Source: Bigelowiella natans CCMP2755
Taxonomy: Eukaryota > Protista > Cercozoa
Reading direction: 5' to 3'
Length of the DNA stretch: 64,000 nt
Assembly (NCBI GenBank): GCA_000320545.1
Contig: ADNK01001387.1
Location: forward strand, 1-64,000
Shown here piece by piece: positions 6,700 through 64,000 of this stretch. The notes under the pieces are model-generated. The model made no database searches. It worked only from the letters and a program-made list of their open reading frames with translations, and was not told where the DNA came from. Position 1 is the first letter of the stretch; each line of letters opens with the position of its first letter. The translations under genes and the position numbers were made by a program.

Positions 6700-8000
6700 C
6701 GCGATTTTATTAAGATCTTAGTTTTCAATGCCTCGCCTCTCATTCATCAAGTAGATCCTTAATGATGTTGGCCTCGAACCTACACAAAGAATGAATATTA
6801 AAAAGAAAATCGAATTGTCGATATATGATGTACAGAAAGAGGATATTAGATGTACACACAGTACATATATATATTTTATTGATGTTGATGTGAGATGTAG
6901 AATTGTGTAAATGAATGTGTTTTTTAAATGTACATTGCCTGGAAATTTCAGTGGATACGTATCCCTCAATAGATACAACACAATCTTGTTTAGGCAATGC
7001 TATATATTTCGCATGCATCTTGCATCTGGATGCAGCCTGTATAGTAGGGCCAAGCATAATATTCGCCAGCGCAGCGCACAATTTCCACAGTCGCAGTCGC
7101 ACATGCGTGAAGGCATTTAATTGATAAATTACATCCGTCTTACATGCGGAAAGACCTGTTATGTCGTCCATGCATTGCCATATAGACGTGTACGTGATGT
7201 CGGTCTGCAGCTCTAGACCTAGGATCACGAGGTCGGGACGCATGTATGAACTTGTCTAGATCATTACGCGTGTACGTGGCCTTGTACATGTACGTACGTT
7301 GCTGCGTATAATGCCACACAAATCTAGAAGCCGTGACGACTACTAGACTAGATGTTGATGACATGCATCACACACAACGACACGACGTCCTTCAAATAAT
7401 AGCTAGCAAACTAGACATGCGCAGTGTCGTATCATACTTGTTCATACTTTCATGATCTCGAGTTTCGTCACCGTTAGGCGGCACATCCATTCCTCATGCG
7501 TTGTCTAGTGCGTATTGTGAGATCTAGAGATACACGCATGCATGATGATCGATGAATGAACATCATCTCTAACAATCAAACAAAACATCTACGGTGCATG
7601 CTACAAGCCAGCAAGCACTACTGCACGACGTACAACACAGGCAACAATGAAATAAGCGTTCAACCAGCCTCGACAAGATTTTACAGTTTAGTAATTTCTT
7701 CCAAACTTAAATTCTCACACACGTGAGAGCGGTGCACTTTCACATGCTAGCATGGACAGAGCGCACGCACATGCGCCCACATTGCATCTTCTTGTTAGTC
7801 ATTAAAATCCGCAGTGGCTTATTGCAAAAAATTGTGCAGTGTTAGGGTTTTAAATGCGATGGATTACATGCGCGTGCGATGTTGAGTATGCGACATCCAA
7901 TTTTGCATGATGATGATAGTTTAGTGTACAGGTGTTACGTCGCAAAATCAATGCATATTCCATCATAAATTTGAAAGTCTGCAAAGTGCACGGGCTTTTA
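6700..8000. other. Partially TpA-depleted, CTAG-enriched intergenic island that contains a possible degenerate gene (ORF 6740-7243, minus)
   Basis: About 10 CTAG in 7201-7620 by hand count, and CA/TG-rich. Lies between two convergent genes. Confidence 0.5.
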
Positions 8001-8095
8001 CTGGTTAGTTCCAACCGCAATGCGATCTTTTCCTTCAGCTACATAGAGTAAATGTTCAAACACTTTTCATAAAAGCAGGCCTGCGTCTTTGCAAC

Positions 8096-10200
8096 TTATG
8101 TACTTTTGACACGAGAATCCATTCCTGCAGTAAATAGCGGGAAAATTTGACAAATGTATATGATTCTCAAAAACATGGATGAATAGCGTTTATGAGTAGA
8201 TTGTAGCCATTTTATTAAAAAAATGTATAGGAACAAATAGATTTCATCGACATAATTTCTGATTGTTGCTGAATGATAATAAAGGGGACTCAACGCTGCT
8301 ACCTACCTCCACCGATCCATACGAGATTTGAGTATCCTGCTTTCTCCAGCTCTTTTACAGCCTGAACAAGTAAGTATCAGTTGTGTTGCTGTGGCAGCTA
8401 TCACAAATTAAATCTGTGCTCGATTTTTTAACAACAGGGTTATCTGATCATCAGCATTATAATACAGAACTACTGATACAATCCCGCCAAATCTAGATGG
8501 TCGTTTTAGAAAAAAGGGCCAAATTTCGATATAAACGCCAGATTATAAGTTGGAAAAATTGGCCATGTGAGTTCAAATATCTGTACCAGAATGGAGCGCA
8601 CGCCGCCTTCGCAGCCTACGACTATCTGTGATGGACAATCAATAATATCCATGAAAACAATAATAAAGAGGGTTTAAGGCTAACAGTGATGTTGATTATT
8701 GGTACCTTTTCTTCCAATTCCGGGAATGCCTCTTTCACCTACCAGGGAATCAATTAATTTTGGTCTCAATCAATATATGTGAATCCTCGCCTGCTCACCT
8801 CCTCAACAAATTTCTCGTTCTTCTCTGTGAACGTCGTGCCTTGTGCCCAAGCAAGAAACTGTTGTACTTTCTTATCATCACCTACCAAGAATATCAAAGC
8901 TCAGGCTTTGATCATCAGTGAAGGTAGTAGTATCCCTGTGCTTCAAGTGTTGCTCACCTGTGGACTTCTCATACAAAGCTACCTGAACAAAATCAAATTA
9001 TTAAAGACGTAGAAAATTTTCATATTGAAACGGTTTGATTGCATACATGAACAGCATTATCTCCGGCAGGCAATGGCTTTTCCTCCCTCTCAAATGAAGG
9101 GCGGACATCAAGAAGCTTATATCCATCGCCCAAATAGCCGTCAATCTGCCGTTGTGTAGTATAATCAGGTCAGAAAAAATAGCCACATTAAGATTTGATC
9201 AGACAGCACCTGATTGGGTTCGGCAATTGTCATAGAGTCCATCCAGCTATGGTAGTAGTTAATAGTAGCAGCAGCAGCCAGCAGCAGGAGGACCAAAGGA
9301 AGGTTCATTATATATATCAAGAACAAATTTGTCTGCAGCTACTACTAGCCCTACTACCACTACCACTTTGATTACTACAATCATCATCCTAGTAATGCTA
9401 ATTTACTACTACCCCCAATCCATCTACAACTTAGGTTACTATATCACCCTCTGTAAGGGCCGAGAGAGTTCGTTCGCTTTAAACGCTCAATCATATCTGT
9501 TGGAATCTGGATACAAATATTATGATTACAATAATCACATGGAACCAATTATGGTATGCGTTAGATAAAACGGTTCACATCACCTTTCCGTAAGTCCTCG
9601 ACGTAGAATGCTTTTAAGGCACATTGATTTTTAGTTACAGTTGCACCGGGCGTCCATCATTAGTAAAAACAAATCACCTTTCTCCCCAAAAAATTGGCGA
9701 GGCGACTTTGAGCACCCCGTCGTGTCATGACTCCGTTGACCCTGCCATCAACACTACTACCACCCAAGGATCATCAATCTCAAGTCAACAACATTATACT
9801 TGTATATCACACCTTTGTAGCAGGAAGAGGAAACCAATCACCGATAAAATCATTAGCTGAATATTGGGAAAAAGACAGTCACATGGGGGATCAAATTAAG
9901 AAGGATAGTAAGGCATGCGGAGCTTACACACAAGAGGAGATAAGAGCTGGGAGGGGACGAGTTGTGAAGTTGGGTTGTCTAAAGCATCAAACTCCTACTA
10001 TTTCCGACATCGGGGCGTACGCATACTGTTGGTGGATGTTTGCCAACTACGACAACAACTTTTTCATCCAAAACTAATAAAAAGAAGAGGAAGAGGAAGA
10101 ATGTAGTAAAGATGTAGTGATTCACAATGCGACAACATCATAATCTTTGTCGTAGATCCAAATACATTGAGCCAATGAAACTACCGGTGTACAGCGTAGA
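8096..10200 (-). CDS. Rhodanese-like domain protein resembling plastid STR-type proteins; N-terminal exons uncertain
   Basis: Spliced translation gives IDGYLGDGYKLLDVRPSFERRK (~9140-9075), FLAWAQGTTFTEKNEKFVEEV (~8860-8800), IVVGCEGGVRS (~8630-8595) and ELEKAGYSNLVWIGGG (~8360-8305), which match the rhodanese LDVR, C-x-x-G-x-R-S and GY..V.W..GG motifs. Confidence 0.8.
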
Positions 10201-10299: not shown

Positions 10300-11230
10300 C
10301 CTCACTGAAGCCAGTTCGAGGCACTGCATTTCGCACACTGTACAGTGTCATGTCACACTTTGGAGATGCAGTTTTTCATCATTGTTCTCATTGCGTTCTC
10401 ATTGAGCGACGACGAAATCGAATTGGCTCGAGGATGTGCGAGCAAGCACGATGGAACTAGTTGAAATCATCCAGCACTTCTAGACTTGTTTGCAAAGGCC
10501 AGGTTTGCGATGGTTTTTGCAATGCATGCAGCCTCTGAATCCAATTTGCAACGCACAGCAAAATTGACCAGCGAGCGCGTGATGACGTGCAGCCGTGCTT
10601 GTCTCGCTGTCTAAGTCAACTCGGGACTAGAACACACTGTTTGCAGTTTGTCATGTCTATGTCACGTCTGATTCGACAGGCGAGCAGTGTGGTGCATGAT
10701 CGCCCGCGAGCAGCAGCCGCATGCACGTGCAACGGCTTCAGGTTCATTTGACACCTCCGATGCAACAACGCAGGTGTCCCAACAAAGCTGGAGGGCAAGC
10801 AGCAGGCGGATTGAGAGCGTCGATAGGCTTGCAATGCGATAGACGACACACGTGATGATGATGATCAAGCATTGTGAACCTTCTCGACACACGCACGTGC
10901 AAAATTGTTGCAGACTGTGCAGTTGCTCCAACATTGTTCATTGATCGCCTCGACCGCAAGAGCTGCATCGTGGCTGCTGCTTGTGGCGATGCAATGAGCG
11001 CTGCGTGCAGGATCATGAAAACCTCAGACGGTGCATCTGACACAACATCTCTACACATCAGACAATTTTCCATGTGCTACCTGAATTTCTGAAATGGCGC
11101 ATTTTGCATTGGAGGCAACATCAGGCAAGCGGCATCAGTTCAGCTGCTCGCAGCGCGCTTCACGCATGCGGTGCTTGCTCGGCCACTATTTTTCTGCACG
11201 CATGCTGTGCACAAACGTCATTGACGGCAC
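10300..11230. other. TpA-depleted intergenic island
   Basis: About 11 TA in 10321-11220 by hand count, 10 of them in CTA or TAG context. CpG is retained. Confidence 0.85.
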
Positions 11231-15431: not shown

Positions 15432-15519
15432 AATTTTCTGGATAAATGGCCAAGCAGTATTCAATATAATGACATCGTGAATTCTGATGTATAGCGAAGA
15501 TATGACCCTTATAATTGAT

Positions 15520-16270
15520 ACATAAGCGAGTATCACATAGTGTTTTGATGCAAGCCGAGCTACGCACGCAGGCCACAAGTGCATGGCGGTGCGTCGCGTT
15601 TAAGAGCCTTACGGCTCTTAATCGTACCATCATAGCAGCGCGTGCCCCTCCTCGATCGTGCTTTATATGTGTAATGGCGAGATCGATTGCAAGATAATCT
15701 AATAGTGACGCACATATATATACAACGCATCATGCAAATCAAGTTGCAATATTTACAAGCAAAGCAGATAGACACGCATCTGCTAGCATTGTCGTCATGT
15801 GTGTGCGCACGCGTGTACAGCACGATGCATATAAATACGCACAGCATGCGCATGCGATGTGTAGTTACAAGCGTCTTTGGTTGTCATCATGTGCAATCCA
15901 AAACGTGTAGTTTTTTTTCCGTGACAAATGCATCAATGTGATGCGCGATCCACGACCGGGGTCGCACTCTTCGCCCATCGCGACATTGTATAATTGCGAC
16001 GAGCGTGCATGCATATCTAGATATATATGGCGGTCGATCGTCGATGATATAATGACCAGGTATTTAAGTTTACAGTAAGTTTATCAAATATATTGATGCA
16101 TGGACATGTAAAGCGCACATACATGGCGCTACACATAGCGCTAATAATAGCGACTTGCATGCAGTTATATATACAGTCATTTTTATATTTGCTAATAAGT
16201 CCTTAGATACACACATGCCATATACTCACCTACACCTACGACTTATGCACGCTCGCTACGGGGCACTTTA
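15520..16270. other. Weak CA/TG-rich, alternating purine-pyrimidine intergenic island
   Basis: Dense gcatgc, tgtg and caca motifs between convergent genes. TA is only mildly reduced. Confidence 0.45.
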
Positions 16271-16513
16271 ACGTCATTGAGAATAATTATGAAGCAGAAA
16301 GGATAAGGGAGTGTGTGTCAGGGGAATTCGTGCTGACAACGGCATCGGATTTATATTACATGTATATCTCGGATGCCCTTTTCCATAATTTAGACCAGGA
16401 TTCTCTTGCCTTCCTAACGTACAGGAGCATGGATCTCTTCGAACTCGGGGGTACTGCATCTGCTGTCATATCCACTACCACTACCATTAATCTCTAAAAT
16501 ATAATCGATGCGA

Positions 16514-19949: not shown

Positions 19950-21180
19950 ACCAGAGCCCTAATAAAGGCTCTGTTTATGTACGCCTTGTGTGACAGGAGT
20001 AAATTTTCGATGTTGAGTTTGCGTCCGCCTAGCATCGCGTCCACATGCGCATGCACGTGTACGTGCAAAATCACCACACACACACACATGATGCACACGT
20101 GCACAACACATTTTGGCATGTGCATGCAGCTCACACACAGTTCACATGCGATGAAGCACAATGGCACGCATGCTAGCATGCGTGCAGCTAGGCAGTGGCG
20201 GTGCACATGCGTGAAACACACACATGAACAAGATTGTGCGCACACATGTCTAGCAGATGTGCCCGCGGCCTGCAGATCTAGAGATGTCAAAATGTGCAGA
20301 TGAACTTGTCATGCACAACCAGAGCCCCATAGGTTCTGTTTCAAAACATGGACAAAGCCAGAATAAAGGTTGCACATTGCGTGACGTTGTCGCATGCTGC
20401 AACACGACAATCCAGCAATGTTCAGCACACCAATCCAGCAATGTTGTTGACATTATCGATCATCGATTGATCCACCCTAGCAGGGCACACATCCAACACC
20501 AACATGGCGCGGCGTGCTGTGCTGGCGTGTGCGCGCATGAAAGCACGCTAGCACGATGCATGCTGGCAGGCATTGAGATGCAGAGATGTTTGGCTAGTTT
20601 TGTGTGCTCAGATTGCATGTGCAACCCCGCCAAGCTTTGAGCTTGTGTGCAATGGGTGCGATGCAGACACAGATACAGCTTGCGTAAACGCGTGTCTGAC
20701 GGTGTGTGCACGTCGATCTGCCACGTTCTTCAATCCATGCGTGCACGTACGTCTGACGTCCACGTGTGTGCCAGGAAGCTTCAGAGCTTCTCAGAGCCAA
20801 CAGGTGGCCATCTGAATTTTGTCTCAAGGTCGCACTGGCAGGTGGAAGTTTGAGTGTGCTGGTCCAGTGGTGCCAGGGTGTGCAGTGTGGTTTGTCTAGC
20901 TGTGGCTTGTGAGTTGGGCACAGGCCCCTGTCACTTTTGACAATTGACTTTTGACCTCCTGCGATTTCTTCTGCCGTCTGTGACTCAGTGCCACTGCTTT
21001 CCAAAATGCACTGACCACGGCACAGGAGTCCTCCCCACCAATTCTCTTGCCAGAGTTTGCAAACCTTGCTTGCTTGTGGCTGGTCTCATCATCATTGCAA
21101 ATGGATGGAGTCTTCGTGGTGTCTCGGACGATGTTCCACAGACGCTGCCACACACAGCATTGGTGGCGATAGAACTGGTG
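19950..21180. other. TpA-depleted intergenic island
   Basis: About 16 TA in 20041-21180 by hand count, 8 of them in CTAG. Several 60-nt lines have no TA at all. Confidence 0.85.
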
Positions 21181-21331
21181 CGACTATGGAAAGAAGCAAA
21201 ACTGGATGCGATGCCCATTCGAAATATCTTCAAACCAGAGCAAAACACATTGTCGCAAATGACAATTTCCATCCTTTCAGTACCAAGAATTGCCGTGTCG
21301 ATAAAGCTCACGCTCACGCACTGAGGACTTA

Positions 21332-27639: not shown

Positions 27640-27989
27640 ATCGTAGACTAGTAGATAAGAGGCGAATGAATTCGCACTGCCAAGCTAGCAGGCGTTCATG
27701 TGCGCAGTGAATGTCTTGATGTATATGATTCAGATAAAATACATCACACTGTGCTAGGCCTAGAGTATGCTAGGCTAGGCAACGAGGGCCGAATGTTGCA
27801 AATTCTGTCCCTGGAGGCACCTTTGTAGTAGACATATGCATGCAATCGTGTCAACTCATATCACTACACAAGTCTAAAAGTCTTGCGCCGCTGAAACACA
27901 CAAATACACACTGCATTTGCGCCAGTGAACTAGTTCACAGAGTGCGTCTACGCGTGTGGCATGCTAGCATGTACCACACAGACTAGAAA

Positions 27990-28030
<41 letters not shown>

Positions 28031-28500
28031 AGAGGAAACGTGGTGTTGAACTCGCAAAGCATCTAGCTAGATCTAGCTAGCTAGATCATGATGTACTAGT
28101 GTAGCATGTTGATGTTGAACATTTTTGCTGTGACATTGACTAGTTGACACATTGAGAGTTACACAAGCTAGCAAGCGCTAGAGCGCTGCTTAGACTGATC
28201 TAGTGAAGAGCATCAAGATGCAGACTGTTTTCAAAATCCACAGCAATGGAATGTAGCTTGTGCGTGTAGCATGCTTAGCATGATGGTGAAGCTTGCTAGC
28301 TAGCTAGCTAGCTTGTCTAGTTGTGGCTGAACACTACTCCACACAACATGTTTTGGCTGCATGTCTAGATGTGGTCGTGTGCCTCAGCACATCTAACTGC
28401 TAAGCTCAACTAGCTAGCTAGCTCAAATGTGTTGATCATTCTGTCTCGACCATGCTAGCTAGCTAGCATGCATGCGCAGCATGAGTGTGATAAGGAACAA
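27640..28500. other. TpA-depleted island with (CTAG)n arrays
   Basis: CTAG tandems at ~28062-28085, 28296-28311, ~28409-28422 and ~28454-28467. Nearly all TA in 28021-28490 is in CTA or TAG context. Confidence 0.85.
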
Positions 28501-36722: not shown

Positions 36723-36839
36723 TCCCTGTTACACCAACCAAATAGTCAAGTACTCCAAGTGTAAGTGGTGAAATCTGATCTAAAATCAAAATAACGTTGC
36801 ATACATTGCAGAAACGACATAATGATGTTGTATTCCCCA

Positions 36840-41136: not shown

Positions 41137-41199
41137 TTCCCACAACCCGGTCAATTCCAATGGACAATTTCGTTGCGCTCCGCCACTCTCAGAGTTGAT

Positions 41200-43560
41200 T
41201 TGCTCGTCTGTCTGCGTGTTGCTTGTGTGTTAGGTGTGTAGGATGTGTGATTTGTTTTTCTTGAATGCAGTGAAGGACAGCACTAAATGGTAGTTTACTC
41301 ACCTACTACATGTAAGTTGATGATGATGTCCTCTCTCTCTCTCTCTCTTTCTCTTGCTCCACTTCGTTGTTGTTATGAGATGTGTGACTACTAGATCTAG
41401 AGTGAACAATGGACGATTTTGGGCAATTTCTGCCCACTGCGTTTCTGCCGCTAGCTTGCAACTGCGACAAACACTGCACGTGTCATGTCGCAAGTCGCAA
41501 GTCGCAAGTCGCAAACTCAGCTAGCAAACTCGAGACCCACATCGCAAATTGGTGCTGCCAATGACGGATTTCCTGGAGCACTCATTTTCCACAATGGACA
41601 CAGCAATGTGTTGTGTGCACTTTGCATGTCCATCATTTCCCACTGAAAACGACCAAACACAGAGGGTTGTGGGAAATGGGCGCCCACGCGGCATCCAAGT
41701 GAGCTGTTCTCAGTTGTCAAACTCAAAGAAGTCGAAGGTCCAGAAACGTGCACACTGCGCTGCACCAGTGTCGGACACAATGAGCACTTCACTTGTTTGT
41801 TCGTTCGTGTGTCACGTGCACGTTCCTGGGCTCGTTCACGATCCTTTCGCTTTGCACGATGACGCTTTGAACCACTTCATCACTGCAACAAAAGGCAAAT
41901 CGAGGGTGAAGGAGGCAGGTCACAATCGTGAACACAGCTGGACAGTGACGTGGTGTTGCGTGTCTGTTGTCACAAGTTTTGGCCCGACCTAGCGACGTTC
42001 TTCAGTTTCACGAGTCCCAGCATGCAAACGGAGTTTTGGTGACACTCCTGATGTGCTGTGACAACTCGAAGAGCCTTGACCCACCCATTGCTGTCAGAAG
42101 CATGATGGTTGGCGGTGCGCAATGCAGGCGACTGGCATGGTTGGGTGGAGGCAGGAAGGCAGGGGAGAACAGCTGGACAAGCAGCTGTCTCAGATCTGTG
42201 TTGATGATGACGTGACGTTTCATGCACGTCACACAATGTCAACATTCATCAAGGCGAAATCGCCTGAAGTGGTGTGCGCGCCGGCAGCGCTGAACATTGG
42301 CAGCGGGCGAAACAGCCCGATGACACGTGAGAGGCTGGCTCTCATTGGTCAACAGCCACTGCACGCATTGTCGCGGCAGTTCATCGAAGTCGCACATTGC
42401 ACTTCGGCTGCATTCTCAACTGTGTGCGTGTTGCTTGTCGCAGCCAATGAACGCCCGCAGATTGCTCTGGCGTTGCTGCTGCTGGTGCAAGCATGCACTG
42501 CGCGGTCTGGATGCAAAGCATTCCAACGCTTGCCATTGGCGCGCTGGTGGCAGTGTGCAACGAGAGAGAGTCGAACGTCAAGCACCAAACGTTGAGCAAA
42601 GCGTTGGTGCAAGGAACCACACGAGCAAGAACCACATGGGCTTGCACAAGCACGTGGCAGCGCCCAAATGAGAGTCATTGCGAGGAGTTGTGAGCACACT
42701 GTTGGTGTTGACACAACTGGCCAACACCAGCCTGGCAACGCCCATCACCAGCTCAACTGAGGGAGCTGAGGACGATGAACTGGCTGGCTGGGGCTGGGTG
42801 CCCTGTTCACCAATTGAAGGTGCAACCAGAACGCATCCCAGGTTTGGCTGACGCTGCTCACCTCGATCGGGTTCGCCAGTCTAGCAGTGGAAACCAGGAG
42901 CACTGAGATGGAGTCATCAAACTGGTGCACACACAGCACAAGCGTGTTGCAAGAAAATCGAGCTGAACAATGGTTCGACGAAAGCTCAGAACAATGAACA
43001 ATGAACAATGAACAAAGCGTTGATCAAATCCACACGCGCCAGAACCACGTGGGAGACAGAAAGGCCCTGTCGATTTCTTTGTCGGTCGAAGGCACACCAA
43101 AGGTGCCAGGTGGCCCCTGTTGAGCAAGGAACAACTTTTCTTTGGAGGCACGCTGGCACGGCATCGAAGGCACCCCAGTGACAACGTTGTGGGGAAAGGG
43201 CGGGGAGGGGGCTAAAAGGCAGCAAGCTTCAGTCAACAGGGCGCAACTCGAGAGTCACTCCAGTTTTTTTCGTTCGAGTTTTTTCAAGCGCCGTGCACCC
43301 AAAAATGATGACACACGTCAACGCTTCTGAAAGGCCATGGACTCACTTTTGGTTGTTTCCCGTTGAAAACGACCAAAACAATGAAACATTTTTTCATCAA
43401 ATCGCAAAACAACAAACACATCCAAGCCATTTCGTAATGCGTCACAGATTTGAAGAGCTCATGCACAGTTCGACGTTACATTTTGGGAGTTATGAATGGC
43501 CCTCAAAACACCAGTAAAGGAGACCAAACACACGTCGCACTGAGCTAGTGGCCACAACAA
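41200..43560. other. Strongest TpA-depleted island
   Basis: About 6 TA in 41401-43440 by hand count (4 CTAG, 1 CTAA, 1 GTAA at the edge), against on the order of 100 expected. CpG is abundant. Confidence 0.95.
41676..43000 (+). pseudogene. Probable intron-containing gene or pseudogene with Tyr codons converted to His or Cys
   Basis: ATG GGC GCC..AA followed by a gtgag donor. Intron-like gtgagcacac..caccag (~42691-42730). Protein-like fragments LDKQLSQICVDDDVTFHARHTMSTFIKAKSPEVVCAPAALNIGSGRNSP and LATPITSSTEGAEDDELAGWGWVP. No Tyr occurs in any frame. Confidence 0.4.
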
Positions 43561-43803
43561 CATGAGCTACAAGGTTTCTTGTGATCACAATCTTGTTGGT
43601 TCAAATGGCGAAAACCGCAAGTGCGACAAGCTCACTGCATGTCGTTAAAGTGAACTGGAATCACTATTTTCAACCGGATGCCTGTCCTCGCTCCCCCCGA
43701 CCATGCCACATGTCACCCGTTGATGACCAGCATCCTTTCCATGACTCCCGTCCTGTAATGCAGAAAAATACACACTGAGCCGCTTGCTCCCTGCGATAGC
43801 ACC

Positions 43804-46800
43804 ATGCGCTGGAACTCGGGGTTGTTTTGGATCCCATTTCTTGCTTGGTATGCACCTCGGCAAGGCGAAGGGGCAATTCTCTATCATCTTGCGTCCTACA
43901 GTAGTTACACACAGTCTCCCATCAAAACTCCGGTCTCCTCAAACCGCTATGATCAAACGTAAGTGCTGCATCAGTCACGAACTATCACGAGTATTCTATT
44001 ATCGTTATCAGCCACATGAAATTGAAGTTCTTGTAAAAATCTTTTGAGAAATTCTACGAGTATGAAGTACACAGTTCTCACAAAGACAAGACGAAATGTT
44101 TTTTCCTTTTCAGGTACATGTTCTGGATGACAGCTGAGTCGAATGGTCGGCAGAATCCAATACATGCGGGGGCTCGTTATGAGGGAACGATTATAATTGA
44201 ACCTGATTTGTCATTGACTTATTATTACGGGCCTGGGACTGGAGATTTGAAAACTAGTTTTTCCAGTGGCGCAGTGGTACAGTCTTATGATATTGCTGTA
44301 TTATTTGTAGCGTTTACCTGACGAGAAAAACTTGCTCTGACGTATAAATACGGTTTTATTACCAACAAGTATGCGAACTCAAAGTGTAGAAATGCATCAC
44401 ACATACATACACAGATTGACGTTTCATCGAATTTCATAATAGCGACGTGTGGTGGCAATAATGCAGATTACCTGGAATAAGTGGATGCACGTGGCCGTGA
44501 CTCGCCAGATCACATCGACACCAAGAAAGCTCTGCTGGTATATAAACGGAAACTTAACGGCCACACAAGATGCTCCATACGCAGTGGTAGTAGATATCCT
44601 TTAGGAACAATTTGCACGATGTCTGCCTTCCTACCAGTGGCGATCTAAACGCAAGAATAACCTTAATAATATTAAAAAAAAAAAAGAGAGAGAAAGTAGA
44701 GGTGGCTGTTGTGCATGCAGTCGCGGCTAAGGCTCAGGGGTTCATGTGAGACTAGGTATAAATCCTCGTGCATAAACTGGAAATACCTTTCAAAAGGCTG
44801 GGCAATGGTCGGGGAATGCAAATCATTTCATTGGTGGGGGGGGCTGGTTGAACGATTTCAAAGGCAAGATGCGAGGATTCTATATTTACGATGAAGCTTT
44901 AAGTCAAGCACAAATCCAGGCCGCCATGACTCGGGTATTAGCATGAGTACAGTTGTACACACAAATGCTAGAATATGCGTATAAAATTGAACTAGCGAAT
45001 AAGTCAACAATATAATATATAATTTGGAAAAAGAGCCTTCCTTCTGCTAATATGGCCTGTCTATCCGGTGATGGAAATCCGCCACTGCCATAAACCAGAT
45101 AGTTCAAAGAATACTTTCTAATGTTGTTTTTTGAACAAACATCACAGGACAGCCCATACGTAGCTCTGTCTGCAGTCGGTATGCGCTTTAGCTATATTTC
45201 AGTGGATACTAAAAATTAATAAATGCCTAGAAAAGGCAAACTCGCACATGGAGTTGAAAAACTGGAGCCATGACTCGCCCTTTTGCATTCATAATCGGGT
45301 GTTTTTCCCAATATTTTTTTCCAATATATGTACGTTTGAAATGCATAAGGAGTAGTGCAGTCTAAATGGGATTCTTCTCATCACCCTTCCAATGACAGTG
45401 AGAATTATCACAACTATATCCTTCTTTGCTAGGTGAAATGAGGCGGACTTCCGCGAATTCCAGCTCATGGAAGCACGTCTCACTCGCACAGGTAGGGATG
45501 TATTTGGACAAAATCCGTGCAAGCTTTTTCTTTCCGAGAGGCGATAGTTACGACGATGAAATGACCAAATGATAATCCAACGGGGTCGGGAGCTCGCTCC
45601 TGCGAGAAAGATTATTCTTTTATATCATCTGACTCGCGAGCATTAATCTCTATTCTTGCAAGTGACAACTGTTACGCTCGCGTATAGCTAGTGATATACG
45701 AAAACTATTCTGCTCTCATAACCAAAGCATATGCCCTCCCCCTCACACCCCGTCCTCCGTCAGAGCTACACCGACCCTATCTTAGTCATAGGGGACCCCA
45801 CAAACTTCGATTCGCGAATTTTCGGATGGAGAGTGAAGGACGTGGCGGAAAGCTCATTTGCGGTGAAGGGTTTCGGCGACGATGCTCACACAGGCAGCGA
45901 GGAGTTACACTATATAGTACTAGACAGAGGGGATCATATGATTGACGGTGTGCGGTTTCTCGCTGGTAAGACTACTGGGCAGTATAAATTCGAAGTGCAA
46001 TTCCATCCCCCCTTCAGGTCTGCTCCATATTTCATGCCGTTTATTCGCAGCTTCAATCAGGAAGGCTGGATGGAGGTGCGCGGCTACCAAATCACTGCGG
46101 GCGGCGCGTGGATTTCCATCAGCCCTGTTGAGAGCATCAGGAAAGGACCCTCCGCGGCAGTTAGTGAAACGGTTTCTTGGATTGCGTTTGAGCGCAGCCC
46201 TGCGACCTTCCGATCTGGCTCGTACGTGTCGGCTCTTGGGAGTTTCAACTCAAAGTATCAGGAATGTGCCCCTACCAATGGAAGTGCACCGACCACCAAC
46301 ATATCCATCTTAGGGGTAACTTCTCCCCAGGCCGTATTCATCGTCAAGATAATGTCGAGGAATGGGGTCGACCCTATCACTGCTCGTTGGATGCGAAAGG
46401 CGCCTAGCTCTCCATCCCTCGACGTTTGCTGGAATGAAGATAGGACATTTGACGATGACCTAGCCCACAACCTGGAGAGTTTTGTCGTGCTGGCTCAGAA
46501 TAGTAGTGCCGTAATTCATACCTCCTCGCCAACATCAGCGCCATCGATATCACCCACTCGCTCCCCCACTGTAAGTCTCGCGTTTAACAAGCCCACGGAG
46601 CAGTCAAGTACCGCACAAAACAGGCAATCTTCCAAGGCTGTGGATGGAAATCCAGATCCACGGATGGAAGAGGGATCATGCTCCCAAACCGAGAACGGGC
46701 ATGCGAACCCTTTCAACATCCTAAACAGCGAGGAGGTGCGTCCTGGCGTGAATGTCAACCGTGGGTCTGTGAGGACGGTAGGACCGTACATCCTCGAGTT

Positions 46801-53353: not shown

Positions 53354-53389
<36 letters not shown>

Positions 53390-55692: not shown

Positions 55693-55719
55693 GCATGCCT
55701 TCAGAATGATGCAATGAAA

Positions 55720-56600
55720 CCTTTTGAACCAATTTTACTTCATGAAACTTTAGCGCATTGATGATCTACGTGCCTCATTTTGGCATTGCACATACATGCT
55801 GCATCACCAGCAATAACACAACTCAAGTTCATTCAGTTTGGTTGCGGCAGAGAACTAGTGCAGCGCGGTACGGTTGTTGGAAGGCGTCAAGGCAGTTGCA
55901 GTTCGTGGTTTGCATTAGTGACTGGACATTGCATTGGGGAAAATGCTTGCACGCATGTGTATCTAGACATTCGCTAACTTGTGCTAGCATCATTCGATGG
56001 TGGCGCAGCGCAGCCACACACTTCAAAAAATGAAACAGACGCTGCAGCAACCACTTGGGGTCGTTGCATGCGTCCACTCGAGCTTGCGCGCGCACGTGCA
56101 TGAAGGATCGCTTGTTTGCACGTCTTGTCTGTTGCTCGGCTGGCGGGTGCACATGTTCGCAGCGAGCAGTGCGACAACTTTGTGGCGGGACGATCGAACA
56201 ACCATTCAATGAACAATTGCTAGCTTGCACGTAGAAGAGGCTTGTTGTTCATGTGTGCACAAGCCATGCACAATCTTCAAGCATGCATGCTTCTAATCCG
56301 AAGCAAACTCAAAATGAATGAAATGACATGTGCGATCGAGCGTGCACATTGGATGTGGCAAAACTATGTCGACTTTGAGGAGACGTGCACATTCATCATG
56401 GACAATGACGCAATGCATGGTGTGCATCATGCATGCAACATTGCTGTGTCCATCATCAGCAGCACCCAGTGACAACGCTAGAACGATGCATCGTACCGTG
56501 ATGATACGACATTCAAATGACATCGTGTGCCAGTGTGCAATGTGCATAATGTGCGCGGCAAGAACGCAGAGCATGTAATCGCGATCCACATCATTGCTGA
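55720..56600. other. TpA-depleted intergenic island
   Basis: No TA in 56041-56220. Survivors are largely in CTA or TAG context. Lies between the two convergent receptor and channel genes. Confidence 0.85.
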
Positions 56601-56657
56601 TTGAAAGATTTGTCGGCCGCCATTTTCTTCGCTGAAATCCTCAGATCGGCAGCTCGG

Positions 56658-59600
56658 TTACTCTTTGAGCACGGGCAAATCATATCCTTTCGCATCAAAC
56701 TGAATTGGTGATCTCCGTTTAGGGTGGCTTGACACCAGATTTTTCAGATTCACGAAGGAACGGCATCTTTCACTTCCTTGAACCTTCGCTCGAGCTCGAC
56801 TTAGGAATGCGCTCGTCATGCCGATTTCCTTGGCTTCCAGCAAGTGCCTTCGTAGTGCATCTCCGTCTTCATTTAAAATGGCTTTGCGTATGTTGACTAT
56901 AATAGCCTGCTCGCGCTCCATCATCGCGATAATCTCTTCTTGTTCATTCTGATATTTTCCCCGGGCGAACGGAGCTGTTTCAATCTTGTTGTTGGTGTCA
57001 TCACCGACGCGGTCTAGTTTACCTTCATGATTAAATCTCCTTTTGTTGTCCCCATACCTTCTCCTCTGCCATGGTCCGTTACTATTTCCCTGTTCCTGCA
57101 TCACTTGTGACGCCAGTTCCACAGAAGCAAGCATGCCAGAGATGTTGTCTAATTTCGCACGAATATCCCCCCATGTAACCTCACAAGCCACAGCGAACTC
57201 CGTCAACTCTTTTGACAATGCCTTGGTGCTGATATGGTCAAACCCCTCTAAAGTTTGACCCTCATGAAACTGTTCGTAGGCTCGGTCGGAAAGCCATCGT
57301 ATTTCTAGGTTAATAATCAAGCCAGCTGCGGCGAACTTGCCCTCTAACTTTATTCGGGACGCCGCCTGATTGAAGCGATGGTTCATCATGGCGATTAGCC
57401 AGTTGAGAAGCATCACAGTAGAGATAACTGTATAAAGTACAAAGAAAAATGTGCCGAGGTAAGGCTCTGAGTCACGGATGGAGTTCCAAAGCTCCAGCTC
57501 ACCCACCAGTACGACATACAATTCTACGAACGCAGAAAATATCGAGTGAAACTCCGTAATAGAGTGCCGGAAGAGACAGTAGAAGACCACGACGAAAGCC
57601 ATATGTATTACTAACCAAACGATACAAAAGATGCCGAAGGCGGAGGTAAGGGACTTCATTGTTGCAATCTGCCCCCCCCAAGTCTCTTGCACCTCTAGGT
57701 AAGAGAACACTCTAGTGCAAGCTAAAATAATAAGAATCGACTGGAACGCTAAACAGACAGGAAACGAAGCCGGATCGTTTGCAAAAACGAGCACAAATTT
57801 TGCGATCGTAAGCGCCAAAGTAACCAGTGCTTCCCCAACGGTCTGATAGTCGGTGTAGATGAATGTTTGCCAGCCTTCAGCCCGCCCTCCGTGGTAGGTC
57901 TGAAATAGCTGTACCGCGCCATAGGCGACAATGATTAATTCACAAATGAAATAAGGAACACTAAGGTACCCAGGCGTATCCTTCAGATACCCGTCCAGAT
58001 TCTGAAACTGGTCAAGATATAAAATCCCAACAACTAGCGACGCCATGTAGAGGGTGTACGTGGCAACTGTAATCTGGAAGATGCTCATTGCGTACTGTTC
58101 CCATTTCATTTGGATAGCGTGGTCAACCAGCGGGTGACTGATCAGGTCCATACACCGGTGCTCCAACATCTTCCGAATTGGCTGCGGCTGTGTCATTTTG
58201 GGAGGGCACACTAACTGGACATCATACTGTACCCACTCAGTTATACCCCATAGCCTCTGTCTATGCACCGCTGTGTCTAGAGCTACCATGGCTGCTGGTT
58301 CGTAGTCCTCAATCAAAGAAATCAACTGTAACCTGCAGCAGCCAATAGAATGATGATGTCAATGATGATGATGATGATGATGATAATGATGATGACGATA
58401 ATAATCAGGTTTTTATTGATTGAAAGGAAATGGAGAAAGTGAGGAATCGTCATATAAATGCAGAAGGTTATCGCTATTAAACAGATGTTCATAAACGAAC
58501 CTTCTGTCAGCAAGACTACACCCGCCTTCGCTGACCAGCATACGAATGACATCCATATACGGGGAATGCTCGACCTGTTAAGAAATAAAGTCGCTGCTTT
58601 CGTCATTCGGTATTATTCCGTTGATTTCATCATCATTTTGTTCGTCCAAATGATTGAAATTATGATATATTCACTCACCACAAATGGACAATATATGCCT
58701 GTTTCATCTTATCAATAACCTGGTCTTTAGGCCCTGTTGCCGATAGTTTTCTCTTCTTTTTCTTGTCGTCGTCGTCATTATTCCTCTCCTTCTGGCTAGG
58801 GTCTATATATGTTTTCTCATAGCTACGGTGGTGCCAGGCAGATGCTGCTTTTTGTATCGGAAACAAACCACCCCGGTCACGCACCATCCTATTTGAATCT
58901 GTAGGACCAAGATCAGATCAGATCACCAGATGCTACTTTTCTCATTAAAATTCTTTCGCAAAATATAATGCTGTGTTGACACTCTTTTCCTCAGCACAAC
59001 GTCGTCCTTGTCATCATCAACGTTGATATCATTACTATCAAAATGGACAAAGACTCCAACATTGAAGCACATCATCAGTACTACAGTAGTAAGCTTCGGC
59101 CTGCTCGCATGCATGCAAGATAAGACAGCGGTGATGGGTGGTCAATATTCAACTAATCGGCTATTACTACTACTACTACTACTACTACCATTTTGGAGGA
59201 GTAGGAAGCGAACGACTTGAACTTGTCCTGCCTGAGAGGCCTCGTGTAACGGTGTACCTGCTTCAGCATCTTCGCCGCCTTTTAGCAGTCAATGGAGTAA
59301 AGAATTAGTGGAAGGTATGAGGTTAGAGGTGATGAAATGATGATAAGGACGACGATGACGAATAGATTCCTGGGCTCGTAATCTTAGATGCTATGAGGAG
59401 GAAGGAGGAAGGAGAAAATATATATGTGACAACAACGCACTACATGTGATATGTTCATCAAGACTATCGAACATACTTACCAGCGTTAACGTCGGCGTGG
59501 TGAGCGATGAGCATTTGCACAATTTCTAAGTGGCCTTCTGAGCAAGCGTAGTGAAGAGGTGTCTCCCCACGATTATTCTCTTTGTTGACAAGCGCCTTAT

Positions 59601-61199: not shown

Positions 61200-63325
61200 T
61201 TGGTTGATGTTATTTATTTGTCGCAGGATCAAATTGCCCCTTATTTATTACCACAATTGGAACTTGAAACGCCGACGAAAGAAGAAGAAGAAGAAGCAGA
61301 AGCAGAAGCAAAAGGAGAAAGAGGAGGGGAGGAGGAAAAGGACAAGAAAAAGAAGAAGCATGGAATCCAAAGTAGACTTAGTTAAAGTTCAAATAGTAGT
61401 TGTTCTAGTATTGCCTAATTATATAACGCAAACGAGCTTTACTCTCTTCTGTGATGTCCATAGCAGAACGGAGAAAGAAGCGACAGCAGTCGAAGCAATG
61501 CCGTTCTTCATGTTTTATGGGACATTGAAAATTGCTTCTTGCCGCCCAAGGCTCACGGCGGAGAAGCGTCAAGAAAGATTATCGACGCAATGGAGGAACA
61601 ATTTCAGAAGGTGTGCAACGAAATATTATTATTATTCGAGATACTTACCTCCTCCATGTGAGTAGCTGTTGAATTGAGATTGTTGGGCACTCAGGACCAT
61701 AATGGCCAGCTTCCATGGCATACGGTTGTGAAGGCTTTCGTGCAAGTTAGTGTCGCAGCAAGACACGCCTTTCAAGTTCAGGCGGAAAAGTTTCACGAGA
61801 ACGGCGTTAAGACTATCTTGGTCCCGAATCCAAGGGTAATAATTTATCTAAAGAAGAGGTCGTTGTGTTAAGTTGTGATGTGTTGTGTTGTAACATGCTC
61901 CTTTTGCTTGCACAAATAGAGGGGATGCAATACTACAAGCCCATCGTTATTTCTCGCCATCTTGCTGAATCAGTTCATAATTGCCCACAGGGGAAAAAGG
62001 AGCGAGCAGATTTCATGATCAAAGATGAAATTACGGAGATAATGACCTTCTCCCGAAATCCTTATGCCATAGGATTGGTATCGGGGGACGGTGATTTCTC
62101 CTCGCAGCTAAGCATGCTTAGAGCGAAACAAGTAAAGCTGTATACGATCACACCTGAAAATTCGAAAGCAGATTTTTCCCTTAACCAATATAAAGTTGTT
62201 GCTAGATGGCCATCCATCCTGCAACCATCACCTGACGAAGGCCTTATCGACTATATTCTTGATTTCTTGGAGTCTTCCTCATGGTCTGTACCTCTAAAGA
62301 AGTACTTAGATGAAATATGTTTGGTTTTCGATTCTTGTTCCCAAGAGAACAAGTTGTTGTATACCAAGCTTCATGATGATTATCGCGAGATGATGGAATC
62401 TATGCTGGAGTCTGCTCTTGATGAATTGGAAGTTACGCATGAGAACTTCGTGCGCTCCCTCTCTAAACGTGCCAAGTCTTGGACGCAAGAAGAGCGGAAA
62501 AGAAAAGTTCTGGTGGAAAAAATCGACGATATTTTACGACTCGACGACTTCGAATACTTCAGGTCCAAGATAATAGCACGCCAAAAGGAGATACTGGCAA
62601 AGACTGAAAGGCTTAAAAGAAACTTAAAAAGAAAGGGATCATCATCTAATATTACCACTAATAACCGACAGCAGCCAAAATATCAAGGTCAATCGGTAAT
62701 TCACGATCGAAGAGGAGAAGGTAAAAAACAAGGGAGTACATGGCAAAAATCAAGCGAGGATGTCTTCCAAGAGTACATGAAAAGCACTGAAGTTGTGCAT
62801 GGAATTGTTGCTGGTGTTCGCCGTAAAAGAGGCTTTGGTTTCATTGCTATTACTGGTGTATCTACGAATCTATACTTTCATTTTAACCAAGTAGTTAGAA
62901 AAAATGCCTTTGCGAAGAGGTATCCTCAACGAGGAGATGCTGTTACCTTCTTCGTGACCCACGCTCGGAGGAAGAACAAAGGCTCCAAATTCGAAGCAGC
63001 GGGAGTAAGATGGGGAGAGGGAGTCAAACCTAACAGTCCCCAGTCAGAAGATCAACACATTGCCGCAGTGCTGGATGGCAAGTATTTGACAGGAGTCATT
63101 ACGATGTTGGACGCTGACCAAACTTACGGGGCAATTAGCTCTCCCATCTTTTCAAAGATGATCATTTTCTACACTCAGGATTTTTCAAAGGCAGAACACG
63201 ATGCACGCCTGTCACCAATCGCTCCAGGATCATCAGTCATGTTCAAGATCAAGAAAGGAGCCACAGTGGAATCAACAGACGATGAAGTGTTCTTGCGGGC
63301 ATCCAGTGTAAGAGCAACGTTCTGA
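61200..63325 (+). CDS. NYN ribonuclease domain + BART(ARL2BP/CFAP36)-like domain + two cold-shock/OB domains; 5' end unresolved
   Basis: NYN motifs VLWDIENC (~61510), KKERADFMI and IGLVSGDGDFSSQLSMLR. BART-like ILDFLESSSWSVPLKKYLDEICLVF..LHDDYREMMESMLE..DDFEYFRSKIIARQ. CSD GIVAGVRRKRGFGFI..NLYFHFNQV..GDAVTF, then a second OB-like unit. Confidence 0.8.
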
Positions 63326-63329
63326 AAAG

Positions 63330-64000
63330 TGACAATTGTTGACTGTCAACGTGTGCGCCGTCAGCCGTGCATCTGGGGCGATCGGATCGGAATGGTCAGC
63401 CGCCGTGAATCGAATGCATGTGTCATGCCTGAGACGGATGCAATGAATTGATCAAATGTTTTCAATGATCATCCTGATGTCTAGATGTGAGACGGATGTA
63501 ATGAAATGTTTAAATTTTTCAATGGTCATCCTAATGTAGCTGTGCAGTGCAGCGGCTACAGCGCTTAAATTGTGTCTGATGTCTAGATGTGTAGCTGTGC
63601 AATGCAGCAGCTGCAGCGCTTGTCTAGCTTGTGCTGTGTTTGTTGGTTTCCACAGTCACGTGTTGCATGTATGCCAGCATGTGAAAGCATTTTCTCTGTT
63701 TCGTGTGCATGTCTAGCGCAGTGCGCAACGGCGCGCTCTTTTCTTTCAGCCTCACTGCAGCCTGGTCATAATCAAGTGCGTACGTGCTGTCCACATGTGC
63801 GGTCCATGATGGCTGTCAACTGGTTGCGCACAGTTTGCGCTGCTGGTGAGCGCTAGCTGTGGCTAGCAGAGCGTAGTCGATGCATCATTGGGTGTTGCTT
63901 GCTAATCTAAATCTGTTTCCACTTGATGCTACATGTTGATTAAGCATGCATGCTCTGTTCACATTCTTGAAAATCGCTCAAACTTCTTGACAGCTTCCCT
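63330..64000. other. TpA-depleted island with internal short duplications; runs off the right edge
   Basis: CA/TG-rich, with duplicated 50-bp and 31-bp units at 63431-63621. Confidence 0.8.

What the first reader, a model, noticed from the sequence alone, without database searches (positions are those of the whole stretch)
6700..64000. Candidate new mutational system: intergenic TpA erasure (TA->CA/TG), an apparent mirror image of RIP
Seen: about ten sharply bounded 0.5-2.3 kb islands lose TpA, gain CpA and TpG, and keep CpG. They lie at 6.7-8.0, 10.3-11.2, 15.5-16.3, 20.0-21.2, 27.6-28.5, 33.2-33.75, 36.8-37.3, 41.2-43.6, 55.7-56.6 and 63.3-64.0 kb. The change is strand-symmetric. Established: 5mC deamination removes CpG, and Neurospora RIP converts CpA to TpA and so enriches TA; neither predicts this pattern. 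Inference: a localised A:T->G:C process acts at TpA, for example deamination of a modified adenine, a modified thymine, or an error-prone repair pathway recruited to silent DNA. I cannot confirm from here whether it has been described in this lineage.
Basis: partly seen in the sequence, partly recalled or inferred. Interest (0 to 1): 0.95.

Follow-up and report, generated by a model that had tools for sequence, protein, structure and literature searches.

The report
TpA-erased islands in Bigelowiella DNA
Six or seven of the ten reported islands are real tracts where TA has been converted to CA or TG between genes of the alga Bigelowiella natans. They are the fossil trace of a TpA-directed hypermutation process that a 2026 preprint has already shown experimentally in this species.

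Summary
The window is Bigelowiella natans nuclear DNA, probably scaffold 30.

**Observation.** Six claimed islands are sharply bounded, strongly TA-depleted and CA/TG-enriched, with CpG kept: 10.3-11.2, 20.0-21.3, 33.2-33.7, 41.1-43.8, 55.7-56.8 and 63.0-64.0 kb. A seventh (27.9-28.5 kb) qualifies once CTAG-embedded TAs are set aside. Three (6.7-8.0, 15.5-16.3, 36.8-37.3 kb) have normal TA.

**Interpretation.**
- The GC gain sits at pyrimidine-purine steps.
- Converting TA in TA-normal spacers reproduces the island composition (r = 0.96).
- Inside flanking coding ends, only TAs at largely synonymous codon phases are lost.
- A 415-bp island segment and its paralogue differ by six CA/TG doublets, with TA/CA/TG three-state sites.

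**Novelty.** The process is not new. Mettrop et al. (bioRxiv 10.64898/2026.01.13.699255) saw exactly this spectrum de novo in mutation-accumulation lines.

**What this window adds.**
- The islands are below that paper's 3-kb cluster cut-off.
- They fill whole spacers between host genes.
- They show no fossil of coding sequence.
- They follow a flank rule: ATAT is almost gone and CTAG is spared.

The parts
10303..11230 (.). TpA-erased island
   Evidence: HMM. 11 TA in 210 TA/CA/TG steps, CA 106, TG 93, GC 0.51. Sharp edges.
20011..21278 (.). TpA-erased island with mosaic CA/TG/CG alternating runs
   Evidence: TA share 0.03-0.06. Six alternating purine-pyrimidine runs of 15-26 nt that mix CA, TG and CG. 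No (TA)n array.
27884..28488 (.). CTAG-rich island, TA-depleted only when CTAG-context TAs are ignored
   Evidence: 31 CTAG in 27.6-28.5 kb, with (CTAG)n arrays. Non-CTAG TA share is 0.10.
33173..33703 (.). TpA-erased island (smallest)
   Evidence: TA share 0.03-0.05. Poisson P 4e-3, the weakest of the six.
41061..43846 (.). Largest TpA-erased island. It lies between a minus-strand kinase gene (ATG at 41136) and the plus-strand PKD/REJ-like gene.
   Evidence: TA share 0.03-0.04. In 41522-43213 the only TAs are three CTAG and one CTAA.
41990..42882 (.). 892-bp stretch without a single TA
   Evidence: About 33 TAs expected, P about 7e-15. Both ends of the run are CTAG sites.
42091..42507 (+). 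Dispersed repeat of about 415 bp, with a transcribed, equally TA-erased paralogue elsewhere in the genome (L004/L006/L005)
   Evidence: 89.5-90% identity. Six CA/TG doublets against L004.
41630..41724 (+). Inverted partial copy of the 5' end of the neighbouring kinase gene (original at 41089-41168)
   Evidence: 42-nt arms are 86% complementary. The copies differ TG versus CA at one site.
55694..56845 (.). TpA-erased island filling the spacer between two convergent genes and running about 190 bp into the minus-strand gene's coding end
   Evidence: Stop codons at 55692 (+) and 56658 (-). The poly(A) site of the plus gene is at about 55764.
63034..64000 (.). TpA-erased island covering the last 98 codons and the 3' UTR of the NYN/BART/CSD gene and beyond. 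It is cut by the window end.
   Evidence: Transcript contig L001 reaches 63498.
6700..8000 (.). Claimed island, not confirmed: a purine-pyrimidine-alternating spacer with normal TA
   Evidence: TA o/e 0.87. TA is 25% of pyrimidine-purine steps. Not called by the HMM.
15500..16300 (.). Claimed island, not confirmed: an alternating spacer with normal or high TA
   Evidence: TA o/e 1.18, CG o/e 1.45.
36800..37300 (.). Claimed island, not confirmed: a CTAG/GCTAGC-rich spacer with normal TA
   Evidence: TA o/e 1.01. 10 of 45 TAs are in CTAG.

Best explanation
The islands are tracts of Bigelowiella natans nuclear DNA in which nearly every TpA has been turned into CpA or TpG. The cause is the TpA-directed A:T>G:C hypermutation that Mettrop et al. 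(2026) observed de novo in integrated viral DNA of this alga.

**Shown here**
- The process acted in sharply bounded domains of 0.5-2.8 kb.
- Where the flanking genes could be placed (the 41.1-43.8, 55.7-56.8 and 63.0-64.0 kb islands), these domains coincide with the spacers between ordinary host genes.
- It hit both strands equally.
- It ran 75 to 290 bp into flanking coding sequence. There, selection kept TAs at codon positions 1-2 (tyrosine codons), while TAs at the largely synonymous phases (positions 2-3 and across codon boundaries) were lost.
- It depends on the flanking bases: A/T-flanked TAs are almost all gone, TAs with a 5' C or a 3' G are partly spared, and CTAG is essentially immune.
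- The ancestral DNA was non-coding, alternation-rich spacer. In at least one island it included duplicated DNA: a 415-bp dispersed repeat and an inverted copy of a neighbouring gene's start.

**Inferred, not shown**
- The chemistry is deamination of adenine in DNA at TpA on either strand, with inosine read as G. The preprint's ADAT2-like candidate could be the enzyme.
- Some local mark (chromatin state, small RNA or repeat recognition) sets the domain borders.
For: **Species.** The window ORF at 61865-63325 is 100% identical to a B. natans protein.

**Direct experimental precedent.** In 15 mutation-accumulation lines, 230 of 231 mutations in two hypermutable regions were A>G or T>C. The authors place them on TpA. 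Ten further TpA hits lay elsewhere, two of them on scaffolds without viral ORFs.

**Tests in the window**
- Transitions keep the purine/pyrimidine skeleton. G or C content rises to 0.55-0.57 at pyrimidine-purine steps. At positions that cannot be targets it stays at 0.41-0.45, against 0.39-0.40 outside.
- Converting 80-95% of TA to CA/TG in the TA-normal spacers gives GC 0.49-0.50 (observed 0.501) and r = 0.96 with the island dinucleotide frequencies. Context-free AT>GC change gives r = 0.70.
- In the 161 codons that the islands overlap, TA at codon positions 2-3 and 3|1 falls from 13.2 to 3.1 per 100 codons (5 observed, 21.2 expected, P = 3e-5). TA at positions 1-2 stays at 3.1 against 4.05.
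- Window 42091-42507 against its paralogue L004 has 38 mismatches, 31 of them transitions. Six are CA/TG doublets; the null mean is 0.53 and the maximum 4 in 20,000 trials.
- A CpG ancestor would predict about 1 such doublet, given 19 shared CG sites and 12 CG-versus-CA/TG sites (my calculation, P about 5e-4).
- At two sites TA, CA and TG all occur among the copies.
- Residual TAs are 28-33% CTAG, against 5% window-wide. Retention is ATAT 3-4%, ATAA 7% and CTAG 84% or more.
- In the paralogous contig L006 all three remaining TAs are CTAG.
- In the preprint's mutation list, CTA/TAG contexts make up 9.7% of events, against about 19% availability (my tally; chi-square P = 8e-4).
Against: - No de novo or between-strain mutation was seen inside these particular islands. 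The few transcript-versus-window differences are not at TA.
- The preprint ties the process to foreign DNA. I found no viral or transposon protein in any island and no fossil of coding periodicity. Either the target range is wider than proposed, or these are non-coding parts of mobile elements that I cannot recognise.
- Island GC at non-target positions is slightly raised (0.45 against 0.40 for purines), so a second, weaker GC-ward force is not excluded.
- CG gains in alternating runs cannot come from a strictly TpA-limited process.
- The availability of TA contexts in the NCLDV region was approximated from this window.
- The enzyme is unknown.
Confidence: 0.85

Rival explanations
1. Functional constraint: the spacers are regulatory or UTR sequence selected to avoid TA, for example to avoid TATA-like sites, UA-directed RNA decay or particular nucleosome behaviour. 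No special mutation process is needed.
For: - The islands coincide with intergenic spacers. One edge is a 3' UTR.
- CTAG and GCATGC-type motifs are enriched, as binding sites might be.
Against: - The loss is strand-symmetric.
- The plus gene's transcript ends 72 nt into the 55.7-56.8 kb island; the rest carries at most the untested 3' UTR of the convergent gene.
- The loss continues into coding sequence at largely synonymous codon phases only.
- Paralogous copies resolved the same sites to CA in one and TG in the other.
- Other spacers of the same alternating type keep normal TA.
- The mutation itself was seen in the laboratory.
Confidence: 0.05
2. GC-biased gene conversion at recombination hotspots located in intergenic regions raises GC locally. 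TA is lost as a by-product.
For: The islands are GC-richer (0.46-0.52 against 0.41) and about 1-2 kb long, which is hotspot-sized.
Against: - Gene conversion favours all weak-to-strong changes. Here, positions that cannot be TpA targets barely change, and AA/TT frequencies equal those of TA-normal spacers.
- A context-free AT>GC model fits poorly (r = 0.70 against 0.96).
- The strong flank dependence and the CTAG immunity are not expected from gene conversion.
- The bias was seen as mutation, not fixation, in asexual MA lines.
Confidence: 0.03
3. The islands are imported or mobile DNA (solo LTRs, MITEs, viral non-coding fragments) that was edited because it is foreign. This is the preprint's model. 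They are not ordinary host spacer.
For: - The largest island holds a 415-bp dispersed repeat whose other copy is also edited.
- TA-poor gene models in the preprint are enriched in transposase and reverse-transcriptase domains.
- This is a sub-case of the best explanation, not a contradiction of it.
Against: - No similarity among the islands, even in purine/pyrimidine code.
- No Pfam, Rfam or viral-contig match.
- No period-3 fossil.
- One island contains an inverted copy of the adjacent host gene's start.
- Editing spreads into host coding ends.
- The rest of the genome could not be searched for copies.
Confidence: 0.3
4. Ordinary CpG decay (5mC deamination), or a sequencing or assembly artefact, produces the CA/TG excess.
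For: CA/TG doublets between repeat copies can in principle come from an ancestral CpG.
Against: - CpG is kept in the islands (o/e 0.79 against 0.83).
- 19 CpGs are shared between the paralogues, so CpG decay predicts about 1 doublet where 6 are seen.
- TA is the third state at multi-state sites.
- Independent RNA-seq contigs reproduce the island sequence and the same composition at another locus.
Confidence: 0.01

Closest known systems
TpA hypermutation of integrated NCLDV and virophage DNA in Bigelowiella natans (Mettrop et al., bioRxiv 10.64898/2026.01.13.699255)
   Same: - Same species.
- Same change (TpA to TpG or CpA on either strand).
- Same long-term signature (Rho TpA <= 0.43 with Rho CpA+TpG >= 1.52, met by 1-kb windows here).
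- Same low use of CTA/TAG contexts.
   Different: - The preprint reports a 186-kb and a 25-kb viral region plus 124 clusters of at least three 1-kb windows, and reads the target as foreign DNA.
- The islands here are 0.5-2.8 kb, with at most two consecutive windows passing the thresholds.
- They lie between host genes and run into host coding ends.
- They carry no detectable viral or transposon gene and no coding fossil.
- The graded flank rule and the CTAG immunity are not described in the preprint.
[quoted passage not shown]
   Same: - A dinucleotide-specific, strand-symmetric transition process.
- It leaves sharply bounded compositional islands.
- It may be a genome defence.
- At least one island here contains duplicated DNA, and both copies are edited.
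   Different: - The direction is the opposite. RIP turns CpA into TpA and enriches TA; here TA is destroyed and GC rises.
- RIP needs duplications and a sexual cycle. Neither is shown here, and the MA lines were asexual.
- The RIP enzymes are cytosine-methyltransferase-like, not adenine deaminases.
ADAR and ADAT/TadA adenosine deaminases, including ADAT2 enzymes reported to act on DNA
   Same: - A-to-G outcome.
- Preference for a 5' U/T next to the edited A. From my own knowledge, ADAT/TadA substrates have U33 before A34.
- A B. natans ADAT2 homologue exists.
   Different: - Those enzymes act on RNA, or only weakly on DNA.
- From my own knowledge, ADARs favour a 3' G. Here TAG is the least affected context.
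- No enzyme has been tied to the B. natans process.
APOBEC3 and AID cytosine-deaminase hypermutation
   Same: Local, context-specific deamination of DNA, used against viral or mobile sequences, that leaves a compositional scar.
   Different: It is C>T at TpC or WRC on single-stranded DNA and lowers GC. Here the change is A>G at TpA and raises GC.
CpG islands in methylated genomes
   Same: Islands of 0.5-2 kb near genes, defined by one dinucleotide.
   Different: CpG islands are regions that escape a genome-wide mutation. These islands are the regions that suffer a local one. CpG itself is unaffected here.

Membership tests
B. natans TpA-hypermutated tracts (Mettrop et al. 2026) | [quoted passage not shown] | tested here: met
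   Windows in five of the six islands pass on one or another 1-kb grid. The 0.5-kb island at 33.2-33.7 kb never fills a 1-kb window.
B. natans TpA-hypermutated tracts (Mettrop et al. 2026) | The changes are TA>CA and TA>TG transitions on both strands | tested here: met
   Six CA/TG doublets and TA/CA/TG multi-state sites between the island and its paralogue. Loss of largely synonymous-phase TAs only in coding ends. CA equals TG.
B. natans TpA-hypermutated tracts (Mettrop et al. 2026) | Mutation rate about 1000-fold above background in mutation-accumulation lines | not testable with these tools
   No read data are available. The only scaffold_30 mutation in their list is a C>T at 857622.
B. natans TpA-hypermutated tracts (Mettrop et al. 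2026) | Cluster of at least three consecutive 1-kb windows | tested here: not met
   At most two consecutive windows pass on any grid offset.
B. natans TpA-hypermutated tracts (Mettrop et al. 2026) | Sequence of viral or other foreign origin | tested here: inconclusive
   No Pfam hit in ten island ORFs. No viral-contig relative. No period-3 fossil. One dispersed 415-bp repeat. The genome-wide copy number could not be checked.
RIP (fungal repeat-induced point mutation) | C>T at CpA, giving TpA gain and CpA/TpG loss | tested here: not met
   The opposite is seen: TA o/e 0.30, CA 1.76, TG 1.63 in the islands.
RIP (fungal repeat-induced point mutation) | Targets duplicated sequence | tested here: inconclusive
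   The largest island holds a dispersed repeat and an inverted gene-start copy. The other islands have no copy within the window.
GC-biased gene conversion tracts | Weak-to-strong changes favoured in all sequence contexts | tested here: not met
   The GC gain is confined to pyrimidine-purine steps. The context-free model gives r = 0.70 against 0.96.
5mC/CpG-decay landscape (CpG islands) | CpG observed/expected differs between island and surroundings | tested here: not met
   CG o/e is 0.79 inside and 0.83 outside.
ADAR-type editing | 5' U preference together with 3' G preference, on double-stranded RNA | tested here: inconclusive
   The 5' T requirement is met. The 3' G is disfavoured rather than favoured. 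The substrate is not testable.

The most novel reading that the evidence does not exclude
TpA editing in B. natans may not be confined to viral or foreign DNA. It may be a domain-wise process that marks a subset of ordinary spacers, or duplicated DNA, among host genes. It spills a few hundred bases into host coding sequence. It follows an extended rule: A/T-flanked TA is edited most and CTAG is immune. That rule would serve as a fingerprint for the enzyme. It could also explain part of the GC-rich, CA/TG-rich texture of the genome's intergenic DNA, and perhaps its abundance of AC:GT repeats.
Probability: 0.5. Interest if true: 0.65.

Novelty: already known. Interest (0 to 1): 0.45.

Why it matters
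A eukaryote that rewrites TpA to CpA/TpG in chosen stretches of its own chromosomes is a rare natural case of targeted A:T>G:C DNA editing. It is the directional opposite of RIP and APOBEC.

The discovery belongs to the 2026 preprint. This window shows that the trace can be read from raw sequence alone. It also suggests that the process reaches small spacers between normal host genes and the ends of those genes.

The CTAG-immune, A/T-flank-preferring rule is a concrete specificity. A candidate deaminase can be tested against it in vitro.

Tried and rejected
- **Self-comparison.** BLAST of the window and a purine/pyrimidine-coded seed search with a reversed-sequence decoy (an earlier version timed out) found no shared element among the islands.
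- **Flank-matching test.** I asked whether CA+TG gains match TA losses per flanking context. The result was uninformative (r = -0.2), because the flanks are themselves edited.
- **Gene finding.** A codon-usage gene finder trained on the window's long ORFs and strand-skew profiles were too noisy to orient genes around the 10, 20 and 33 kb islands. Pfam on flanking ORFs placed only a phosphatase exon.
- **Database searches.** Pfam on island ORFs, Rfam, a viral-contig scan and a 90%-clustered protein search with the island ORF were all empty.
- **Exact-protein look-ups.** These failed for P0001, for the ankyrin ORF and for the island ORF.
- **Metagenome probes.** Both exact 24-mer probes found nothing. 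One was in the island core and one at the kinase start codon. The negative result therefore says nothing about transcription.
- **Off-target contig.** L003 was an unrelated bacterial contig.
- **Preprint tables.** The cluster table (S10) was not in the stored supplement, so I could not check whether any island here is listed.
- **Strain comparison.** Protein variants of the NYN gene show no difference in the edited C-terminal part.
Full report
**Origin of the window.** Long ORFs encode eukaryotic proteins: a REJ+GPS polycystin-1-like protein, a polycystin channel, ankyrin, RCC1 and a NYN+BART+CSD fusion. The fusion ORF is 100% identical to Bigelowiella natans protein EP00466_P017990 (JGI model 88333), whose name points to scaffold 30. 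The window is therefore nuclear DNA of this chlorarachniophyte alga. It is 43% GC, with window-wide TA o/e 0.78 and CG o/e 0.85.

**The observation.** Sliding 500-bp statistics and a two-state HMM on whether each TA/CA/TG step is TA agree on six islands: 10303-11230, 20011-21278, 33173-33703, 41061-43846, 55694-56845, and 63034 to the window end.

- Pooled values inside the islands are TA o/e 0.30, CA 1.76, TG 1.63, GC-dinucleotide 1.39, CG 0.79 and G+C 0.50. The rest of the window has TA 0.83, CA 1.14, TG 1.12, GC-dinucleotide 1.02, CG 0.83 and G+C 0.41.
- The largest island contains 892 bp without any TA, where about 33 are expected.
- The edges are sharp. The TA share drops from 0.23-0.41 to 0.04-0.17 within 400 bp.
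- CA and TG are balanced in every island.
- Three claimed islands (6.7-8.0, 15.5-16.3 and 36.8-37.3 kb) have normal TA and share only the CA/TG/GC enrichment.
- The island at 27.6-28.5 kb looks TA-normal, but half of its TAs lie in CTAG arrays. Without them, 27884-28488 is called an island.

**What the islands are not.**
- They are not copies of one element. A BLAST self-comparison and a search in purine/pyrimidine code, which transitions cannot erase, found nothing above a decoy.
- They contain no Pfam domain, no Rfam family and no relative in viral contigs.
- Their purine/pyrimidine skeleton has no three-base periodicity (power 0.1-2.0, P > 0.1). All six coding controls show it (3.2-38, P <= 0.023). 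A gene scrambled only by transitions would have kept that signal, so the islands were non-coding before they were edited.
- They are not an artefact. Independent RNA-seq contigs match the island margins.

**Tests of a TpA-specific mutational origin.**
1. *Where the GC gain sits.* Transitions preserve purine/pyrimidine class, so positions that can never be TpA targets serve as an internal control. Purines preceded by a purine are 45% G in the islands and 40% outside. Pyrimidines followed by a pyrimidine are 41% C against 39%. At pyrimidine-purine steps G or C reaches 55-57% against 42%. The GC gain therefore sits where TpA editing would put it.
2. *Forward simulation.* The TA-normal spacers have the same alternation-rich skeleton (pyrimidine-purine steps 0.30, against 0.28 in the islands and 0.24 elsewhere). 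Converting 80-95% of their TAs at random to CA or TG gives G+C 0.49-0.50 and a dinucleotide profile with r = 0.96 to the islands. This includes the GC-dinucleotide excess, which arises from GTA>GCA and TAC>TGC. A context-free AT>GC change to the same G+C gives r = 0.70.
3. *Coding ends.* Three islands overrun coding ends. In the last 98 codons of the NYN gene and the last 63 of the polycystin gene, TA at codon positions 2-3 and across codon boundaries falls from 13.2 to 3.1 per 100 codons (5 observed, 21.2 expected, P = 3e-5). TA at positions 1-2, the tyrosine codons, is unchanged. This is the pattern of a regional mutation pressure filtered by selection on the protein.
4. *A paralogous copy.* A profile-free search of 1.84 billion proteins with an ORF from the largest island found one real relative, a 65-residue product on a B. 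natans transcript contig.
   - At the DNA level, window 42091-42507 is 89.5-90% identical to contigs L004 and L006. These contigs come from another locus and are themselves TA-free apart from CTAG sites.
   - Between the two copies, 31 of 38 mismatches are transitions. Six are adjacent CA/TG doublets; random placement gives a mean of 0.53 and never more than 4 in 20,000 trials.
   - A CpG ancestor cannot explain them. With 19 shared CpGs and 12 CG-versus-CA/TG sites it predicts about one doublet (my Poisson estimate is P about 5e-4).
- At two sites the copies show TA, CA and TG together.

**Sequence rule.**
- Residual TAs in the islands are 28-33% CTAG, against 5% window-wide.
- Relative to unedited spacers, retention is 3-4% for ATAT, 7% for ATAA/TTAT, about 10% for TTAA and ATAC/GTAT, 22-31% for TAs with one 5' C or 3' G, and 84% or more for CTAG.
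- In 41522-43213 the only TAs are three CTAG and one CTAA. In L006 all three TAs are CTAG.
- My tally of the 211 scaffold-10 mutations in the preprint's Table S2 gives ATA/TAT 67, TTA/TAA 67, GTA/TAC 52, CTA/TAG 20 and other 5. CTA/TAG is used about half as often as its availability in this window would predict (chi-square P = 8e-4).
- The fossil record here and the live spectrum there agree.

**Literature.** Mettrop et al. (bioRxiv 10.64898/2026.01.13.699255) ran 15 mutation-accumulation lines of B. natans.
- They found a 1000-fold raised rate in an integrated giant-virus region and a virophage region.
- 230 of 231 changes there were A>G or T>C, and the authors place them on TpA.
- The process was active in only some lines.
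- They scanned 1-kb windows genome-wide, defined 124 clusters of at least three windows, and proposed an ADAT2-like deaminase and a defence role.
- No other paper in the library describes this.

The 'candidate new mutational system' is therefore already described in this species.

**What this window adds.**
- The islands are smaller than the preprint's cluster threshold; at most two consecutive windows pass.
- They match the species' median intergenic distance of about 1 kb (PMC13746701).
- They occupy the spacers between host genes:
  - a convergent pair, running from 2 nt after one stop codon to about 190 nt inside the other gene, with the first gene's poly(A) site only 72 nt in;
  - a divergent pair, a kinase starting at 41136 and the PKD/REJ-like gene;
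  - a 3' end with its UTR.
- Other spacers are unedited, for example the roughly 260-bp divergent promoter at 61.0-61.3 kb, so the process is selective.
- The largest island is a patchwork of duplicated DNA: the 415-bp dispersed repeat, an inverted copy of the kinase gene's first 16 codons and its leader, and two heptamer arrays.
- Whether duplication, a mobile origin or a chromatin state attracts the editing cannot be decided from one window.

**Mechanism.**
- *Shown:* the direction, the dinucleotide, the strand symmetry, the domain structure, the flank rule and the spill-over into genes.
- *Inferred:* adenine deamination in DNA, with inosine read as guanine. The two strands of a TpA step then give TpG or CpA in different descendants, which explains the 1:1 CA:TG ratio and the doublets between copies.
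- CG gains in alternating runs and three T>C events listed in ATG context in the preprint table hint at a weak second activity at TpG/CpA.
- The rivals are selection on spacers, biased gene conversion, imported TA-poor DNA, CpG decay and artefact. Each is contradicted by at least two independent results above. Only the 'mobile or foreign target' sub-model remains open.

**Verdict.** The phenomenon is remarkable, but it was published as a preprint in 2026, so I rate it as already known and give it moderate interest for the increments listed above.

Noticed in passing
window 28061-28080, 28290-28313, 28410-28463, 36926-36937; L006:512-930: CTAG is the one TA context that survives editing, and it also forms (CTAG)n / GCTAGC arrays in spacers. 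In the paralogous contig L006, all three remaining TAs in 1565 nt are CTAG.
   Followed up: partly
window 41089-41168 and 41630-41724: An inverted partial copy of the minus-strand kinase gene's leader and first ~16 codons (MGACAAS, a likely myristoylation start) lies inside the largest island. A third short copy of its first 22 nt is at 43356-43377.
   Followed up: partly
L004:1-1876, L006:1-1565, L005:1-1150: There is a transcribed locus elsewhere in B. natans that is TA-erased over at least 1.4 kb. L004 and L006 come from the same sample and are 99.6% identical, yet one of their two mismatches is TA versus CA. L005, from another sample, differs from L004 by 11 mismatches in 478 nt, including two CA/TG doublets. 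This suggests recent or ongoing editing there.
   Followed up: partly
window 47009-47083, 52818-52873, 23610-23661: Compound microsatellites (AT)n(GT)n and (AC)n(AT)n occur in the window. AC:GT repeats are reported as unusually common in B. natans (PMC13746701). TA>TG/CA changes inside (TA)n arrays followed by slippage could seed them.
   Followed up: no
window 6700-8000, 15500-16300: These spacers have normal TA but strong purine-pyrimidine alternation: all of TA, CA, TG, CG, AT and GC are enriched, and CC/GG o/e is about 0.5. They look like the unedited state of the island skeleton. The cause of the alternation itself is unexplained.
   Followed up: partly
window 45731-55692 (+) and 56658-58358 (-): A polycystin-1-like gene (REJ domain, GPS motif) and a polycystin/ion-transport channel gene sit tail to tail. 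This PKD1/PKD2-like pair in a rhizarian alga is separated only by an edited spacer.
   Followed up: no
window 61350-63325 (+): A NYN + ARL2-binding BART + cold-shock-domain fusion protein. Its introns are at 61612-61692 and 61836-61918. It has no relative outside B. natans among 5.8 billion clustered proteins.
   Followed up: no
window 41487-41514 and 42989-43015: Perfect four-copy heptamer arrays (GTCGCAA and GAACAAT) inside the largest island.
   Followed up: no
L003:1-1912: An unrelated bacterial IS110-type transposase contig. It was pulled in because a 37-residue low-complexity product shares a 90% cluster with the Q-rich tail of the PKD-like gene. It is a clustering artefact.
   Followed up: yes
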